Positions 11,560-61,680 of a stretch of DNA of 64,000 nucleotides are shown in pieces. The notes under the pieces are model-generated. The model was not told where the DNA came from and did not search any database. It saw nothing but the letters and a program-made list of their open reading frames with translations. The stretch is from Malacoraja senta (taxonomy: Eukaryota), in NCBI GenBank assembly GCA_038087875.1, contig CM075990.1:7440001-7504000 (forward strand). Direction: 5' to 3'. Every line of letters starts with the position of its first letter. The first letter of the stretch is position 1. The translations under genes and the position numbers were made by a program.

Positions 11560-13221
11560 TATCTCAGAATATTCGTTGGGAGCTGAGCGATTGATAAGGA
11601 AGGAGACAGGGCGAGTGACCAGGCTGGCGTTGATCTGGTTCACACGGGCAGCGTTGATGACTGAGAGAGATCGTTCTCCGACATACCTTGGCTTCTTCCC
11701 TTTTTTCTTGTCCTCGACTCTGTGTGAGATTCGATGCGGATACCCAGCGTGGCCCCGGGACATTCCCAGTCTCACTCAGCGCTGCTTCTTCTACCAGGAG
11801 TGCAGAGGCAGGCAGGCAGGCAGGCAGGCAGCCCCCCTCTTCCACCTACCCCACCCCCCCATCCACCCTCTCGCCCATCACTTTATGAAAATGCATCTGG
11901 CTTGTAGATTAGCATCTCCTGGCTCACTGGGGAGAAATAAAAGCTGAAAGAATGGGCCTGGAGCTCCCGGGGGGAATTTGGGAAGAATCGTTTATTCATA
12001 TGCTGGGAGAACCTACCTCCATTTCTGCATTAGCTATTGGGAGGGGCGCAGGCATTTCTCCTTGGACTGGCATTTCTGCAGTTTGTTTTAATGATTTCTC
12101 CACGCTAAGCCGCCCGCTCCCCCAGCCGTTTTCTCCTCCTCCCCTCCTCTTTCTTTCTTTTTAATTTTTCCACCCCCCTCCCCTCCCCTCTCTCGCGGGC
12201 GGGGCGATGCTAGATTTCAACATGCAATGTCAGGCTGCTCTGGTGGAGCCGTTCCCTTCCCCGCATTCCTCCCTCCCTCCCATCAAGCCGATTGGTTTGT
12301 ATCCTTAAGTGCCGGGCCGGGGTTGGATGGCGACTTGAGAGTAGCAGGTGTATTCTGCTGCTCTGCTGCTACTGACGGGCCGGCCGGCAGCGGATGGTTG
12401 TGGGGTCCGGCTGGGGCTAGAGGAGAGGACAGGGAAATACGGCAGTAGCGGGTCCTGTGTGTGTGTGTGTGTGTAGATGTATGTATGTATGTATGTGTGT
12501 GTGTGAGTGAGTGAGTGTTTGGCTGCATCAGCGTGTGCTAGTGCCGAGAATCGCCGGGCACCTGGAGAAGCTCAGCCTCGAAGGTGNNNNNNNNNNNNNN
12601 NNNNNNNNNNNNNNNNNNNNNNNNNNNNNNNNNNNNNNNNNNNNNNNNNNNNNNNNNNNNNNNNNNNNNNNNNNNNNNNNNNNNNNNNNNNNNNNNNNNN
12701 NNNNNNNNNNNNNNNNNNNNNNNNNNNNNNNNNNNNNNNNNNNNNNNNNNNNNNNNNNNNNNNNNNNNNNNNNNNNNNNNNNNNNNNNNNNNNNNNNNNN
12801 NNNNNNNNNNNNNNNNNNNNNNNNNNNNNNNNNNNNNNNNNNNNNNNNNNNNNNNNNNNNNNNNNNNNNNNNNNNNNNNNNNNNNNNNNNNNNNNNNNNN
12901 NNNNNNNNNNNNNCCCGGTACCCAGCAACAGCAGCAAGACAGAAAGGGGGAAACAAGCGATGTGATGATGGAGCTGACTCAGCGCCTCGCCAGTATCGCC
13001 GTATGACTGTCCATTCCAGCATCGCCGGACCCTGCATCTGACGGGAGAGAGAGAGGGGGGGGGGGGGGGGGTGGCAGAGAGAGGGAGAGGGAGGGGGGGG
13101 GGAGGAGGATTTTTCTTCCAGATGCACTGGCCCCCGTGTGATTTTTCGGCCTCTCTGAACCCTGGACAAATGCGCTCCTGATGTCTGTGTGTAGGCTGGC
13201 GAGCTTGGCATTCTCTACAGG
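11560..13221 (+). promoter_or_regulatory. GC/CpG-rich NRG3 promoter and 5' region (interrupted by gap 12587-12913)
   Basis: Free of transposon sequence and CpG-enriched. GC box GGGCGGGG 12197-12204, reverse CCAAT (ATTGG) 12291-12295, AP-1/MARE-core palindrome GCTGACTCAGC 12973-12983. Lies immediately upstream of the NRG3 ATG. Confidence 0.6.
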
Positions 13222-13914
13222 ATGAACGAGGGAGGCATCTCTGCAGCTCCACCCGTTTTCCCCGTCGTCTCTGCAGACCCCGAAGGCTCCAACCCCGGGG
13301 ACGAGCAGGAGGTCTCGCCGCCGTCCCGGGGTCTCCACTGCAGCGGCTGCGTGGTGTGGCCTCGCCAGCAGACCTGGTTGTGCGTCGTCCCGCTTCTCAT
13401 CGGCTTCATCGGGCTGGGGCTCAGCCTGATGTTGCTCAGGTGGATCGTGGTGGGGTCGGTCAAGGAGTATGTGCCGCCGGACCAGCGGGAATCCAACCGC
13501 GTCGGGCAGGATCCCATCTTCCTCTCCAAGCCCAGCTCCGTCCCCAAGAATAGGGATACGACCACCACCACCAGCACCGCAGCACCGCCAGCAGCAGCAG
13601 CAGCAGCAGCAGCATCAGCACCACGCACCCTCCAGTCAATCCTCTTGGCCCCGGCACCCCCAGACTCGCCACCCAGGGCACGGTCCACTCCTCCACCCCC
13701 ACGCCCAGGCCGGGGGTCCCGCTCACCTCCAGCGGCCCCGGGACGTCGCCCTACCGCCTCACGCCCACCGCCACCCACGGGACGCCCTGGCACACGCTGC
13801 CCTACTCTACCTCTGCAAGCAAATTCTTCCTGCACGACTCCACGCCGTCCTGGACACTGTCGAAAGCGGGGCCATCGACCACCGACACCCGCTCCGTCGT
13901 CAGACCCAAATTTC
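13222..13914 (+). CDS. NRG3: Neuregulin-3 first coding exon (N-terminal hydrophobic segment plus Ser/Thr-rich region), with an apparent 1-bp frameshift near 13580
   Basis: The translation LHCSGCVVWPRQQTWLCVVPLLIGFIGLGLSLMLLRWIVVGSVKEYVP...GQDPIFLSKPSSVPK matches the NRG3 N-terminus as I recall it. After 13581 a second frame gives FLHDSTPSWTLS...RPKF, also NRG3-like. The exon ends at donor TTTC|GTAAGT (13914/13915). Confidence 0.95.
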
Positions 13915-14244
13915 GTAAGTAACATGTTTCATTACTCTCCCCCCCCCTCCCTATTGTGGGACTAAAGGGACAGCGAGGGAGCAGGTGGGTGGGTGTGCAT
14001 TCTGTGAGTGAGTGTGCAAATGTGTGTGAGAAAAGTCACTATTACACTTGCCCGTGCGTGAGCGAGTGTGCATTCTGTGAGTGAGTGTGCATTCTGTGAG
14101 TGAGTGTGCATGCCCCCGCCGCGAGTGTGCAAATGTGTGTGAGAAAAGTCACTGTACACTTGCCTGTGTGAGAGAGCCCGTGCATCTCTGTGGTAATTCC
14201 TCTGAGTAGCTCCACACGGTAGTGAGTTTGTGCACGTGTGTGTG

Positions 14245-14404
14245 TGGGGGGGGGGGAGTTGTGTGTATGTGTGTGGGGGGGGGGGTTGTGTGTATGTGTG
14301 TGGGGGGGGGGGTTGTGTGTATGTGTGTGGGGGGGGGGGGGTTGTGTGTATGTGTGTGGGGGGGGAGTTGTGTGTATGTGTGTGGGGGGGGGGTTGTGTG
14401 TATG
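14245..14404 (+). repeat. G-tract minisatellite (G8-13 TTGTGTGTATGTGTGT)n running into a gap
   Basis: Six visible units, directly readable. Confidence 0.9.
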
Positions 14405-15762
14405 NNNNNNNNNNNNNNNNNNNNNNNNNNNNNNNNNNNNNNNNNNNNNNNNNNNNNNNNNNNNNNNNNNNNNNNNNNNNNNNNNNNNNNNNNNNNNNNN
14501 NNNNNNNNNNNNNNNNNNNNNNNNNNNNNNNNNNNNNNNNNNNNNNNNNNNNNNNNNNNNNNNNNNNNNNNNNNNNNNNNNNNNNGGGGTGTGTATGATG
14601 TGTGTGTGTGAGTGGGGGTGTGAGTGGGGGTGTGTATGATGTGTGTCTATGTGTGTGTGTGAGTGGGGGGTGTTCTGCATGCTTCAGTAGACCAGGGAAT
14701 TAACGCTATTGTTATAGAGACTGCACTTGTTCAGGAGCAGGAATTATCAATCAACATCAGCAAGCTCATAATGCATTTAACATTCCAATGTGTAAATAAA
14801 TTCACGCTGACTAATCTTCTTCCCAGTTACAACCAGGATTATATCTGTGTACTCTTCAGTTTCTATCTTCCAATGAGAAAAGATGACTATTGTTATGTTT
14901 ATGTCCAAGAACAGCAGCATTTGCTCTTCTGTAATAAGATTGATTCCAACTGTAAATATAGATGATTGTTATTCTAATCCAGTGTATGTAAGGGGCATGA
15001 CTCTCACTGTGTGTATGTGGGCAATGATTCCAGCTTTGTGTTTATGGTGGCTGAACCACCCTGTGGATATTGAAGCTGAATCCAACCCTGTGGATGTGGC
15101 AAATAGTTCTAACCCTGTTATTTGGAGTATACTTCTCACCCTGTGTATATGAGGGCCCCTTTTGTTAGGGGCCTAATTCTGGCCTTGTGTAGTTGGACCA
15201 TAATTCTAACCCTGTTGGTTTAAGGGCATTGAGTGGATAATTCTATAAATTCTGTATTCAGAGGATAATTTAAATCTGTTTATTTAGAGAATAATTCTGG
15301 CCCTGTATATATGGGGATGCTTCAAGCCTTGAGCATGTGGCTTCTGAATTGCTCCTCTACACATCGAAGCTATTACTAATCCAGTGTACAAGTTATAATT
15401 ACAATCTACCTATTTGTGGTATGACTCGCTGTGCCTTTTGCTTCCATGCTGTTTAAATGGAGGCGGTTTCAAACCTTTTGCAAATGCTACCTGGAATAAA
15501 ACCATCTCAGTGTTAAAAATTGTTGACGGTGGAAATCTGGGATGAAAACAGAAACTGCAGGAAGCACTTAGCAGGTCAGGCAGCATGTGGGGACCAAGAA
15601 ACAGAGTTGACGTTTCAGGTTGACAACCTTCCTGATGTCAACTGTACGTATGCAAGGAGCATTGTACGGCTGTATACATGTTAGCTGTTTCCAACTGTAA
15701 AATGGGACTGCTGATTCTGACTGTGCATATGATTGCCTATTCTAGCCCTGTGCATGTGGAGT

Positions 15763-59433: not shown

Positions 59434-61680
59434 AGGTCATAAGTGATAGCAGCAGAATTAGGCCATTCAGCCCCTCGAGTCTGCCCCGCCATTCAATCAT
59501 GGTTGATCTTTCTCTCCCTCCATTCTCCCGCCTTCTCCTGACACCCGTACTAATCAATAATCTATCTATCTTTAAAATTATCCATTGGCTTGGCCTCCAT
59601 AGCAAAGAATTCCGCAGATCACCACCCTCTGACTAAAGAAATTCCTACTCATCTCCTTCCTGAAGGAACATCATTTAATTCTGAGGCTACGACCTCTAGT
59701 CCTTGATTCTCCCACTAGTGGAAACCTCCTCTCCACATCCACTCTATCCAAGCCTTTCACTATTTGGTATGTTTCAATAAGGTCCCCCCTCATTCTTTTA
59801 AACTCCAGCGACTACAGGTTCAGTGCCGTCAAACCATCATCATAAGTTCCCACTCATCCCTGGGATCATTCTTGTAAACCTCTTCTGGACCCTCTCCAGA
59901 GCCAGCACATCCTTCCTCAGATATGGTGCCCACAATTGCTCACAATATTCCAAATGCAGCCTGACCAGCGCCTTATAGAGCCTCAGCATTACATCTCTGT
60001 TTATCCACACAAGCCCTCTAGAAACAAATACTAGCATTGAGTTTGCCTTCTTTACTACCGATTCGACTTGCAGATTAACTTTTTGGGAATCCTGCACCAG
60101 CTCCCAAGTCCCTTTGCACCTCCGATTTATGGGTCTTCTCCCCATTTAGAAAATAGTCCAAGCCTTTATTTCTAATACCAAAATGCATGACTCCACACTT
60201 TGCTACACCATATTCCATCTGCCACTTCTCTGCCCACTCTCCCAACCTGTCCAAGTCCTTCTGCAGAGTCCCTGCTTTCTCTGCCCTTCCACCTATTTGT
60301 GTATCATCCGCAAAGTTGGCCACAAAGCCTTCAATCCCCTCGTCCAAATCATTAATATACAACGTGAAAGGTAGCGGCCCCAGCACCGATCGTTGTGGAC
60401 CTCTGCTAGTCACTGGCAGCCAAGCAGATAAAGCCCCCTTTATTGCCACTCTTTGTCTTCTGCCATCCAGCCAACCTGCTATCCATGCTAGTATCTGCCC
60501 TTTCATACCGTGGGCTCTTATCTTCCTTCGCAGCCTCACATGTGTCACCTTGTCAAAGGCTTCCTGAAAATCTAGGTAAACAACATCCACTGATTCTCTT
60601 TTGTCTGTCCTGCTATTTACTTCTTCAAAGAATTCCAGCAGATTCGTCAGGCAAGATCTCCCCTTCACAAAACCATACTGACTTTGGCCTATTTTATCAT
60701 GAACTTCTCAGTACTCCGTAACCTCATCCTTTATAATGGACACTAAAATCTTACAAACCACTGACGTCAGACTAACGGGCCTGTAATTCCCACTATTCTG
60801 CTTTGCTCCCTTCTTGTACAGCGGGGTAATATTGACAATTTTCCAATCGTTTGGAACCACTCCTGTCTTTATAGATTCTTGATATATCACTATTAATGCC
60901 TCCACAATCTCTAAAGCCATCTCTTTCAGAACTCCAGGGTGCAGTCCATCTGGTCCAGGTGACATCCACCCTCAGCCTTTTCAGTTTCCCAAGCACCTTC
61001 TCCATAGTAATAGCCACTCCACCAACTACCACCCCCTGACTCTCTTGAATATCAGGCACATTATAGACAATAGACAATAGGTGCAGGAGTAGGCCATTTT
61101 GCCCTTCGATCCAGCACCGCCATTCAATGTGATCATGGCTGATCATCCCCAATCAGTACCCCGTTCCTGCCTTCTCCCCATATCCCCTGACTCTGCTATT
61201 TTTAAGAGCCCTATCTAGCTCTCTCTTGAAAGCATCCAGAGAACCCGCCTCCACCGCCCTCTGAGGCAGAGAATTCCACACGCTCACCACTCTCTGTGAG
61301 AAAAAGTGTTTCCTCGTCTCCGTTCTAAATGGCTCACCCCTTATTCTTAAACTGTGGCCCCTGGTTCTGGACTCACCCAACAACATTGTTGGTGTTTTCT
61401 ACTGTGAAGCCTGATGCAAAAAAGTTGTTCAACTCCTCTGCCATTTCTTTATTCCCCATTATCACTTTCCCTGCATCTATCGCCAGCAGTCTAACGCCCA
61501 CTCTTGCCTCTTTCTTATCTTTATATATCTGAAGAGCGTCTTGCTCTCCTCTTTTATCTTATTAGCTAGCTTACCTTCATATTTCATCTTTTCTCCCCCA
61601 TATTGCCTTCATAGTTAACTTCTGTTGTTCTTTGAAAGCTTCCCAATCCTCTGGCTTCCCACTAATCTTTGCAATGTTAT
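59434..61680 (-). mobile_element. Long CR1 LINE fragment (RT domain, frameshifted) with a nested CR1 3' end at 61063-61383
   Basis: SPGPDGLHP.VLKE, GNYRPVSLTSVV.K, GRSCLTNLLEFFEEV, VYLDFQ.AFDKV, FADDT. Confidence 0.92.

What the first reader, a model, noticed from the sequence alone, without database searches (positions are those of the whole stretch)
13573..13914. Hidden frameshift in NRG3 exon 1: the ORF track follows the wrong frame after about 13580
Seen: the ATG frame continues as poly-Ala and then Pro/Arg-rich sequence, meeting the donor in phase 0. The frame starting at 13581 reads STASSSSSSSSISTTHPP...WHTLPYSTSASKFFLHDSTPSWTLSKAGPSTTDTRSVVRPKF + C|GT. At the switch, the 9-bp repeat AGCACCGCC has one copy lacking a C (AGCACCGC|AGCACCGCC, 13573-13589). 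Known (from recall): vertebrate NRG3 has a Ser/Thr-rich stalk with LHDSTPSWTLS and ...PKF-H leading into the EGF exon, which implies phase 1. Inference: adding one base restores a 694-nt phase-1 exon. This is most likely an assembly error in low-complexity GC-rich DNA. Otherwise it is a real null allele or loss of this isoform.
Basis: partly seen in the sequence, partly recalled or inferred. Interest (0 to 1): 0.7.

Follow-up and report, generated by a model that had tools for sequence, protein, structure and literature searches.

The report
Frame break in skate NRG3 exon 1
The first coding exon of a skate's neuregulin-3 gene really does change reading frame inside a short Thr/Ser-coding repeat, but this is most likely a sequencing or assembly slip (or else a very young broken allele) in an otherwise ordinary, well-conserved gene.

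Summary
Window 13222-13914 (+) is the first coding exon of NRG3 in a skate. It is about 94% identical in protein to Amblyraja radiata and Leucoraja erinacea NRG3.

- **Frame switch.** The N-terminus and membrane segment lie in the ATG frame up to about 13578. The Ser/Thr-rich stalk (…LHDSTPSWTLS…RPKF) lies in the -1 frame from 13581 to the GTAAGT donor at 13915.
- **Evidence.** Homology, pN/pS (about 0.1 in the correct frame on each side of the break; 4-5 in the ATG frame after it) and a codon-position change-point at 13580 all agree.
- **Phase.** Transcripts of related skates show the exon ends in phase 1 (C|CT, Pro).
- **The lesion.** It is a perfect 8-nt tandem duplication (13573-13580 / 13581-13588).
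- **Consequence if read as written.** The ATG frame would stop about 24 codons into exon 2, before the EGF domain.
- **What could not be settled.** No sequence from the same species was found, so artefact versus real allele is open. My estimate is artefact about 0.6, real recent null allele about 0.33, dead duplicate about 0.04.

This is an ordinary finding of low interest.

The parts
13046..13221 (+). 5' UTR of NRG3 exon 1. It includes a GA/poly-G tract within which transcripts of related skates begin.
   Evidence: Aligns nearly base for base with the 5' ends of three skate transcripts (L001, L004, L005) and two genomic contigs (L002, L003).
13222..13914 (+). Coding part of NRG3 exon 1 as assembled: 693 nt from the ATG to the last exon base. 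Orthologues have a length of 3n+1.
   Evidence: tblastn with skate and sawfish NRG3 proteins. DNA alignment to skate transcripts.
13222..13578 (+). Segment read in the ATG frame: cytoplasmic N-terminus, hydrophobic membrane segment, and the juxtamembrane stretch up to ...KNRDTTTTTST.
   Evidence: 93-95% protein identity to rajid NRG3 and 85% to Pristis and Mobula. pN/pS is 0.10-0.12 in this frame. G+C at the third codon position is about 0.9.
13375..13455 (+). Hydrophobic segment WLCVVPLLIGFIGLGLSLMLLRWIVVG, the N-terminal membrane anchor of NRG3.
   Evidence: Columns are nearly invariant across elasmobranch orthologues. The membrane role is inferred from general knowledge of NRG3 and was not tested here.
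13561..13624 (+). Low-complexity ACC/AGC (Thr/Ser) tract that contains the break. Its length varies among skates in steps of 3n.
   Evidence: Tandem Repeats Finder reports period 9 and period 3 arrays. Tract lengths differ between A. radiata, L. erinacea and the Logan transcripts.
13573..13588 (+). The frame break: two perfect copies of the 8-mer AGCACCGC (13573-13580 and 13581-13588). Equally, this is a 9-mer AGCACCGCC duplicated with one C missing from the first copy.
   Evidence: The sequence itself. Period-8 run of 9 matches starting at 13572. Change-point at 13580. The window carries 35 or 26 extra nt here relative to other skates, that is 3n-1.
13581..13914 (+). Segment read in the -1 frame: the Ser/Thr-rich stalk with LHDSTPSWTLS and RPKF. 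The last base, C at 13914, is the first base of a split Pro codon (phase 1).
   Evidence: Alignment to nine elasmobranch NRG3 proteins. pN/pS is 0.04-0.13 in this frame against 4-5 in the ATG frame. The exon junction is seen in related transcripts compared with genomic contigs.
13915..13920 (+). Splice donor GTAAGT of intron 1.
   Evidence: Same position and sequence as in L. erinacea-like genomic contigs L002 and L003. Transcripts L001, L004 and L005 diverge exactly here.
13654..13655 (+). Site of a 21-nt in-frame deletion (7 aa, TRGTSPV) relative to all other elasmobranchs compared. It is flanked by CACCC microhomology.
13689..13690 (+). Site of a 27-nt in-frame deletion (9 aa) relative to other skates.

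Best explanation
The window carries the orthologous first coding exon of neuregulin-3 (NRG3) of a skate species. That species is distinct from Amblyraja radiata and Leucoraja erinacea.

The exon encodes the N-terminal cytoplasmic stretch, the membrane anchor and the Ser/Thr-rich stalk. It ends in phase 1 before the EGF-domain exon, which lies outside the window.

As assembled, the reading frame is broken once, at 13573-13588. This lies inside an ACC/AGC repeat tract that changes length easily. A short motif is duplicated there with a length of 8 nt instead of 9.

The most likely cause is a consensus or assembly slip in this G+C-rich, low-complexity spot: one C lost from a genuine in-frame 9-nt duplication, possibly at a heterozygous repeat-length difference. 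On this reading the living animal has an intact phase-1 exon and a normal NRG3.

**Shown:** gene identity, the frame switch and its position, the exon phase, and strong purifying selection on both halves.
**Inferred:** that the missing base is technical rather than biological.
For: **Gene and frame**
- The closest proteins are NCBI-named pro-neuregulin-3 of Pristis, Mobula, Amblyraja, Leucoraja and other elasmobranchs.
- Two tblastn HSPs fall in frames +1 and +3.
- Alignments show the orthologues run straight through in one frame.

**Selection**
- pN/pS is 0.10-0.12 before the break in the ATG frame.
- It is 0.04-0.13 after the break in the -1 frame, and 4-5 after the break in the ATG frame.
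- The downstream half has therefore been kept as coding for essentially the whole time since the split from other skates. The break is either not real or very young.

- The break falls in a tandem-repeat tract of a 67% G+C exon.
- The only departure from the NNC triplet pattern is the GC at 13579-13580.
- The other two indels of this lineage in the exon are multiples of three, 21 and 27 nt.

**Leads only**
- Other notes of this scan report several one- and two-base frame breaks in conserved genes of the same assembly. I did not check them.
Against: - No read, transcript or second assembly of the same species could be found. The technical origin is therefore a prior, not a result.
- The lesion is a perfect 8-nt tandem duplication. 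A single natural replication-slippage event produces exactly that, whereas the artefact reading needs a real 9-nt duplication plus a lost base at the unit boundary.
- The sequencing technology of the assembly is unknown. If it is a high-accuracy long-read assembly, an error at a two-base C run is much less likely.
- Natural frameshift alleles of NRG3 exist in chicken (PMC5521077).
Confidence: 0.6

Rival explanations
1. This is a real, evolutionarily very recent germline frameshift allele. An 8-nt tandem duplication arose by replication slippage in the Thr/Ser repeat and was captured in the assembled haplotype, probably heterozygous or polymorphic.

Transcripts from this allele would encode the N-terminus and membrane anchor followed by about 110 Pro/Arg/Ala-rich residues. 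They would stop early in exon 2, before the EGF domain. The allele would therefore be null for all isoforms that start at this exon and probably subject to nonsense-mediated decay. Isoforms from alternative first exons, if skates have them, would be spared.
For: - The perfect 8-mer tandem duplication at 13573-13588 is the signature of a single slippage event.
- The tract is demonstrably slippage-prone among skates.
- Carrying the ATG frame into exon 2 of a related skate transcript gives a stop after 24 codons (proxy only).
- Chicken NRG3 has a segregating frameshift deletion, and NRG3 uses alternative first exons (PMC5521077).
Against: - NRG3 exon 1 is strongly constrained on both sides of the break (pN/pS about 0.1), so a fixed or old break is excluded.
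- Only a rare young allele fits, and that has a low prior for any one conserved gene.
- The same sequence is equally produced by loss of one base from an in-frame 9-nt duplication.
- There is no independent sequence from the species.
Confidence: 0.33
2. The window holds a duplicated, decaying copy of the NRG3 5' end (a pseudo-exon like the chicken PsiNRG3 segment), not the working gene. On this reading the working exon 1 lies elsewhere in the genome.
For: - Partial duplications of NRG3 exon 1, intron 1 and exon 2 exist in chicken (PMC5521077).
- The window differs by about 5% in DNA from five other skate sequences that are nearly identical to each other.
Against: - pN/pS of about 0.1 over both halves, the intact ATG, the intact GTAAGT donor and the conserved 5' UTR all argue for a copy under selection.
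- No second NRG3-like protein cluster was seen in any elasmobranch.
- The 5% divergence is what an orthologue of a different skate lineage would show.
Confidence: 0.04
3. The sequence is correct and the gene is still expressed in full. The possible routes are the ATG frame being the true one (a Pro/Arg-rich stalk with a phase-0 intron), removal of the extra bases by splicing, or ribosomal frameshifting.
For: The ATG frame is open to the donor and beyond.
Against: - All three frames are open here because of the G+C content.
- The ATG frame after the break has pN/pS of 4-5 and no similarity to any NRG3.
- A phase-0 end would put exon 2 out of frame.
- There is no GT dinucleotide in 13560-13625 that could act as an internal donor.
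- No slippery site or stimulator is evident.
Confidence: 0.01

Closest known systems
Pro-neuregulin-3 (NRG3) of rajid skates: Amblyraja radiata XP_032868825.1, Leucoraja erinacea XP_055517799.1, and Logan transcripts from SRR24105902, SRR24105903 and SRR24105887
   Same: - Same exon architecture: 5' UTR, ATG, membrane anchor, Thr/Ser tract, LHDSTPSWTLS, RPKF, and a phase-1 GTAAGT donor.
- About 94% protein identity and about 95% DNA identity.
- The start of the intron also aligns.
   Different: - The window has five N-terminal amino-acid differences.
- It has a longer Thr/Ser tract whose extra length is 3n-1, which is the frame break.
- It has two in-frame deletions of 7 and 9 residues in the stalk.
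NRG3 of other elasmobranchs (Pristis pectinata XP_051897470.1, Mobula, Narcine, Heterodontus, Chiloscyllium and others) and of tetrapods including human
   Same: - The membrane segment and the GQDPIFLSKPS block are conserved.
- The LHDSTPSWTLS motif and the PKF exon end are conserved.
   Different: - The stalk between these blocks is poorly conserved and varies in length.
- The residue after PKF is Pro in elasmobranchs.
Segregating frameshift deletion and partial duplication of chicken NRG3 (Abe et al. 2017, PMC5521077)
   Same: It is a naturally occurring small frameshift indel in a 5' coding exon of NRG3, in a gene that also has alternative first exons.
   Different: - The chicken case is a 2-bp deletion in a different, small exon.
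- It was shown by genotyping and is linked to copy-number variation.
- For the skate there is no population or read evidence.
Consensus or polishing indel errors in low-complexity, G+C-rich first exons of vertebrate genome assemblies
   Same: It is a single non-3n length error inside a short tandem repeat of a conserved gene that otherwise shows strong purifying selection.
   Different: - This could not be demonstrated here.
- A perfect 8-nt duplication is not the commonest form of such errors, which are mostly homopolymer length errors.

Membership tests
NRG3 (pro-neuregulin-3) orthologue, exon 1 | Conserved N-terminal region with a hydrophobic membrane anchor (…WPRQQTWLCVVPLLIGFIGLGLSLMLL…GQDPIFLSKPS) | tested here: met
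   E = 1.3e-60 to Pristis NRG3. 93-95% identity to rajid NRG3 over residues 1-117.
NRG3 (pro-neuregulin-3) orthologue, exon 1 | Ser/Thr-rich stalk with the LHDSTPSWTLS motif, ending in …PKF | tested here: met
   Present only in the -1 frame, 13581-13913. It aligns to nine elasmobranch NRG3 proteins and to a human isoform.
NRG3 (pro-neuregulin-3) orthologue, exon 1 | Exon ends in phase 1 at a GT donor directly after …AAA TTY C | tested here: met
   Related skate transcripts and genomic contigs diverge exactly at this point. The window has C|GTAAGT at 13914/13915. Phase 1 holds only in the -1 frame.
NRG3 (pro-neuregulin-3) orthologue, exon 1 | One uninterrupted reading frame from the ATG to the donor | tested here: not met
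   The frame changes at 13573-13588. The exon is 693 nt, whereas orthologues have 3n+1 (706 nt in L001).
NRG3 (pro-neuregulin-3) orthologue, exon 1 | EGF-like domain and C-terminal region downstream | not testable with these tools
   No further NRG3 exon lies in the 64-kb window, as expected given the very long intron 1. The Pristis gene spans about 300 kb.
Assembly or consensus indel artefact | Raw reads of the sequenced individual disagree with the assembled base string | not testable with these tools
   No reads are available. No contig or protein of the same species is in the collections.
Assembly or consensus indel artefact | Break lies in low-complexity or G+C-rich sequence of a gene otherwise under purifying selection | tested here: met
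   Tandem-repeat tract. Exon G+C is 0.67. pN/pS is about 0.1 on both sides of the break.
Natural slippage frameshift allele | Lesion is a clean tandem duplication, or a deletion of a repeat-adjacent unit, whose length is not a multiple of three | tested here: met
   Perfect 8-mer tandem duplication at 13573-13580 / 13581-13588. This is not exclusive: a 9-mer duplication lacking one C gives the same string.
Natural slippage frameshift allele | Same lesion seen in independent reads, individuals or transcripts | tested here: inconclusive
   An exact look-up of the 247-aa frameshifted ORF found nothing. No intact version from the species was found either.

The most novel reading that the evidence does not exclude
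The 8-nt tandem duplication is real. The sequenced skate then carries a natural knock-out of all NRG3 isoforms that start at the canonical membrane-anchor exon, in a gene that is otherwise under strong purifying selection. This would be a young loss-of-function allele of a neurodevelopmental ErbB4 ligand in a cartilaginous fish, tolerated either because it is heterozygous or because alternative first exons supply EGF-containing isoforms.
Probability: 0.3. Interest if true: 0.3.

Novelty: already known. Interest (0 to 1): 0.12.

Why it matters
The main value is for annotation.

- An ORF- or ATG-frame-based gene model at this locus would produce a false 247-aa product, or a truncated NRG3 without its EGF domain.
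- The correct model needs a frame correction at 13573-13588.
- Combined with other frame breaks noted in this assembly, this break is a useful flag for local consensus quality in G+C-rich first exons.
- If the break proved real, it would be an ordinary young loss-of-function allele of modest interest. It would not be a new kind of biology.

Tried and rejected
**Searches for sequence from the same species (all blank)**
1. Exact look-up of the 247-aa frameshifted ORF.
2. Homology search with the N-terminal part, restricted to proteins of 127-404 aa. It returned only distant vertebrate NRG3 exon-1 ORFs at 78% identity or less.
3. Search with the -1-frame half, restricted to proteins of 61-194 aa. 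It returned no hits.
4. Search with Pristis NRG3, restricted to proteins of 359-1141 aa. It found other elasmobranchs but not this species.

**Sawfish genomic DNA.** I tried to fetch the Pristis locus for a DNA outgroup. The gene range is too long and no DNA was returned. Synonymous changes therefore could not be polarised onto the window's lineage.

**Scan notes.** The notes have nothing on this locus or on neuregulin. They only yielded unverified leads that this assembly has other small frame breaks.

**Literature.** A search for NRG3 isoform classes returned irrelevant papers. Only the chicken NRG3 paper was useful.

**Readings rejected**
- ATG frame as the true frame: pN/pS of 4-5 and no homology.
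- Splicing out of the extra bases: no GT in 13560-13625.
- Openness of the frame as evidence of coding: all three frames are open.
- N runs as evidence of a short-read assembly: several are flanked by unique sequence and may be deliberate masks. I drew no conclusion from them and did not try to fill them.

Full report
**What is in the sequence.**
- An ATG at 13222 opens a frame that runs without a stop to 13965, a 247-aa ORF. It reads ...SKPSSVPKNRDTTTTTSTAAPPAAAAAAAASAPRT..., followed by Pro/Arg-rich sequence.
- The frame with codons at 13581, 13584... has a stop at 13551-13553. It then reads STASSSSSSSSISTTHPPVNPLGPG...KFFLHDSTPSWTLSKAGPSTTDTRSVVRPKF, ending one base before GTAAGT at 13915.
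- All three forward frames are open over 13554-13913, because the exon is 67% G+C. Openness alone therefore does not tell which frame is used.

**What gene it is.**
- A profile-free HMMER search of the ATG-frame N-terminus (residues 1-117) against 1.8 billion representative proteins gave 42 hits. Those I looked up or that carried a source name are NRG3. The best was Pristis pectinata pro-neuregulin-3 (E = 1.3e-60, 87% identity).
- A second search listed NRG3 of nine elasmobranchs.
- The closest cluster holds Amblyraja radiata XP_032868825.1, Leucoraja erinacea XP_055517799.1 and three full-length transcripts assembled from public runs.
- The window is 93-95% identical to these over the N-terminus but differs from all of them at the same five residues. 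It is about 5% diverged in DNA, while the others are within about 1% of each other.
- The window therefore comes from a different skate lineage. Scan notes on other windows of this genome also call it a skate, a lead that agrees with my own result.
- Only exon 1 of the gene lies in the window.

**Which frame is coding, and where the switch is.** Four lines of evidence agree.
1. *Homology.* tblastn with four NRG3 proteins gives 13222-13557 in frame +1 and 13626-13913 in frame +3. Protein alignments show every orthologue running through in one frame, from ...KNRDTTTS... to ...THPPVNPLGPG...LHDSTPSWTLS...RPKF. The ATG-frame translation after the break matches nothing in skate NRG3 (best E 0.31).
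2. *Selection.* Against each of five skate sequences, pN/pS is 0.10-0.12 before the break in the ATG frame. After the break it is 0.04-0.13 in the -1 frame, 4-5 in the ATG frame and 1.8-3.6 in the third frame (undefined against L004, which has no synonymous difference there).
3. *Composition.* G+C at the third codon position (about 0.9) moves from the ATG frame to the -1 frame between 13520 and 13580. A two-segment codon-position model has its optimum at 13580, with all positions within 2 log units in 13568-13584. It beats one-frame models by about 60 log units. The model was trained on the ends of the same exon.
4. *Triplet pattern.* The ACC/AGC tract follows an NNC pattern that is broken only by the dinucleotide GC at 13579-13580.

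**Exon phase.**
- Genomic contigs of an L. erinacea-like skate (L002, L003) and transcripts (L001, L004, L005) are identical up to ...AAATTCC. They then diverge into GTAAGT (genomic) or CTACCACC (transcript).
- The exon therefore ends with the first base of a Pro codon, which is phase 1. The coding part of exon 1 is 706 nt (3n+1) in L001, against 693 nt (3n) in the window.
- The window has the same GTAAGT donor at 13915.

**Anatomy of the lesion.**
- Relative to the other skates, the window carries 35 or 26 extra bases in the Thr/Ser tract (36-1 or 27-1). It also has two clean in-frame deletions of 21 and 27 nt further on.
- Within the extra bases, 13573-13580 and 13581-13588 are identical 8-mers (AGCACCGC), followed by C.
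- There are two equally simple descriptions:
  - a single 8-nt tandem duplication, giving a 685-nt exon after removing it.
- Both restore phase 1. The sequence alone cannot choose between them.
- Perfect period-8 duplications occur about once per 6 kb in this window (10 loci). Finding one exactly at the change-point is therefore not a coincidence.

**Consequence if the sequence is taken literally.**
- The product keeps the N-terminus and membrane anchor and then has about 110 unrelated residues.
- Continuing that frame into exon 2 of a related skate transcript (a proxy, since the window's own exon 2 is not available) gives a stop after 24 codons, before the EGF domain.
- That would be a null allele for exon-1-containing isoforms and a likely target of nonsense-mediated decay. 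The decay prediction is an inference.

**Artefact or real allele.**
- The selection result means the break cannot be old. It is either technical or a very young allele.
- For the artefact reading:
  - the break sits in a repeat tract of a G+C-rich first exon;
  - the other indels of this lineage in the exon respect the frame;
  - there is a generally higher prior for consensus indels than for a true loss-of-function allele in a constrained gene;
  - as unverified leads, several other small frame breaks in conserved genes have been noted in this assembly.
- For a real allele:
  - the clean 8-nt tandem duplication is what one slippage event would give;
  - the tract is visibly slippage-prone among skates;
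  - a segregating frameshift in chicken NRG3 and alternative first exons in NRG3 provide precedent (PMC5521077).
- I could not find any sequence of the same species, and the assembly technology is unknown. The N runs in the window may be gaps or deliberate masks. I drew nothing from them and did not try to fill them.
- My estimate is artefact 0.6, real young allele 0.33, decaying duplicate copy 0.04, anything else 0.01-0.03.

**Comparison with what is known, and verdict.**
- This is the ordinary NRG3 exon 1, already annotated in related skates. The frame break is either a routine assembly defect or a routine young null allele.
The lesion is also a clean 8-nt duplication, and the split codon is Pro in elasmobranchs.
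- The finding is of low interest. Its practical value is a corrected gene model and a flag on local assembly quality.

Noticed in passing
window 13654/13655 and 13689/13690: There are two lineage-specific in-frame deletions (21 nt = 7 aa, and 27 nt = 9 aa) in the NRG3 stalk. Both are relative to all other elasmobranch NRG3 compared, and both are flanked by short microhomology. They show that the stalk tolerates length change as long as the frame is kept.
   Followed up: partly
window 13561-13624; L001-L005 at the same place: The ACC/AGC (Thr/Ser) tract of NRG3 exon 1 behaves like a coding microsatellite among skates. A. radiata, L. erinacea and the Logan transcripts differ in it by 9-nt steps (TTTS-TTTT, TTTSTSS-TTTT, TTTSTSSSSTTTTT).
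   Followed up: partly
window 13046-13110: The 5' UTR holds a (GA)n plus poly-G tract. Three transcripts of related skates begin inside the matching tract, so either the transcription start lies there or assembled transcripts break at it.
   Followed up: no
window 12587-12913 and 14405-14585: N runs lie on both sides of exon 1, leaving it on a 1,491-nt island of sequence. The right-hand run sits in GT/poly-G repeats, and the left-hand one has unique sequence on both sides. I did not fill them or look them up.
   Followed up: no
window 13215-13925 (-): A 236-aa antisense ORF covers the whole exon. It is most simply a by-product of the G+C-rich, stop-poor sequence and is not evidence of a gene.
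   Followed up: no
window 60078-60668 (-): This ORF fragment has a reverse-transcriptase domain (Pfam RVT_1, E = 2e-17). It is a decayed retrotransposon in NRG3 intron 1.
   Followed up: partly
window 13921-14400 vs L002/L003: The first ~300 nt of intron 1, which are rich in GTGAGTGTGCA-type repeats, still align at roughly 90% with the L. erinacea-like genomic contigs. The chicken NRG3 paper also reports a conserved 5' segment of intron 1.
   Followed up: no
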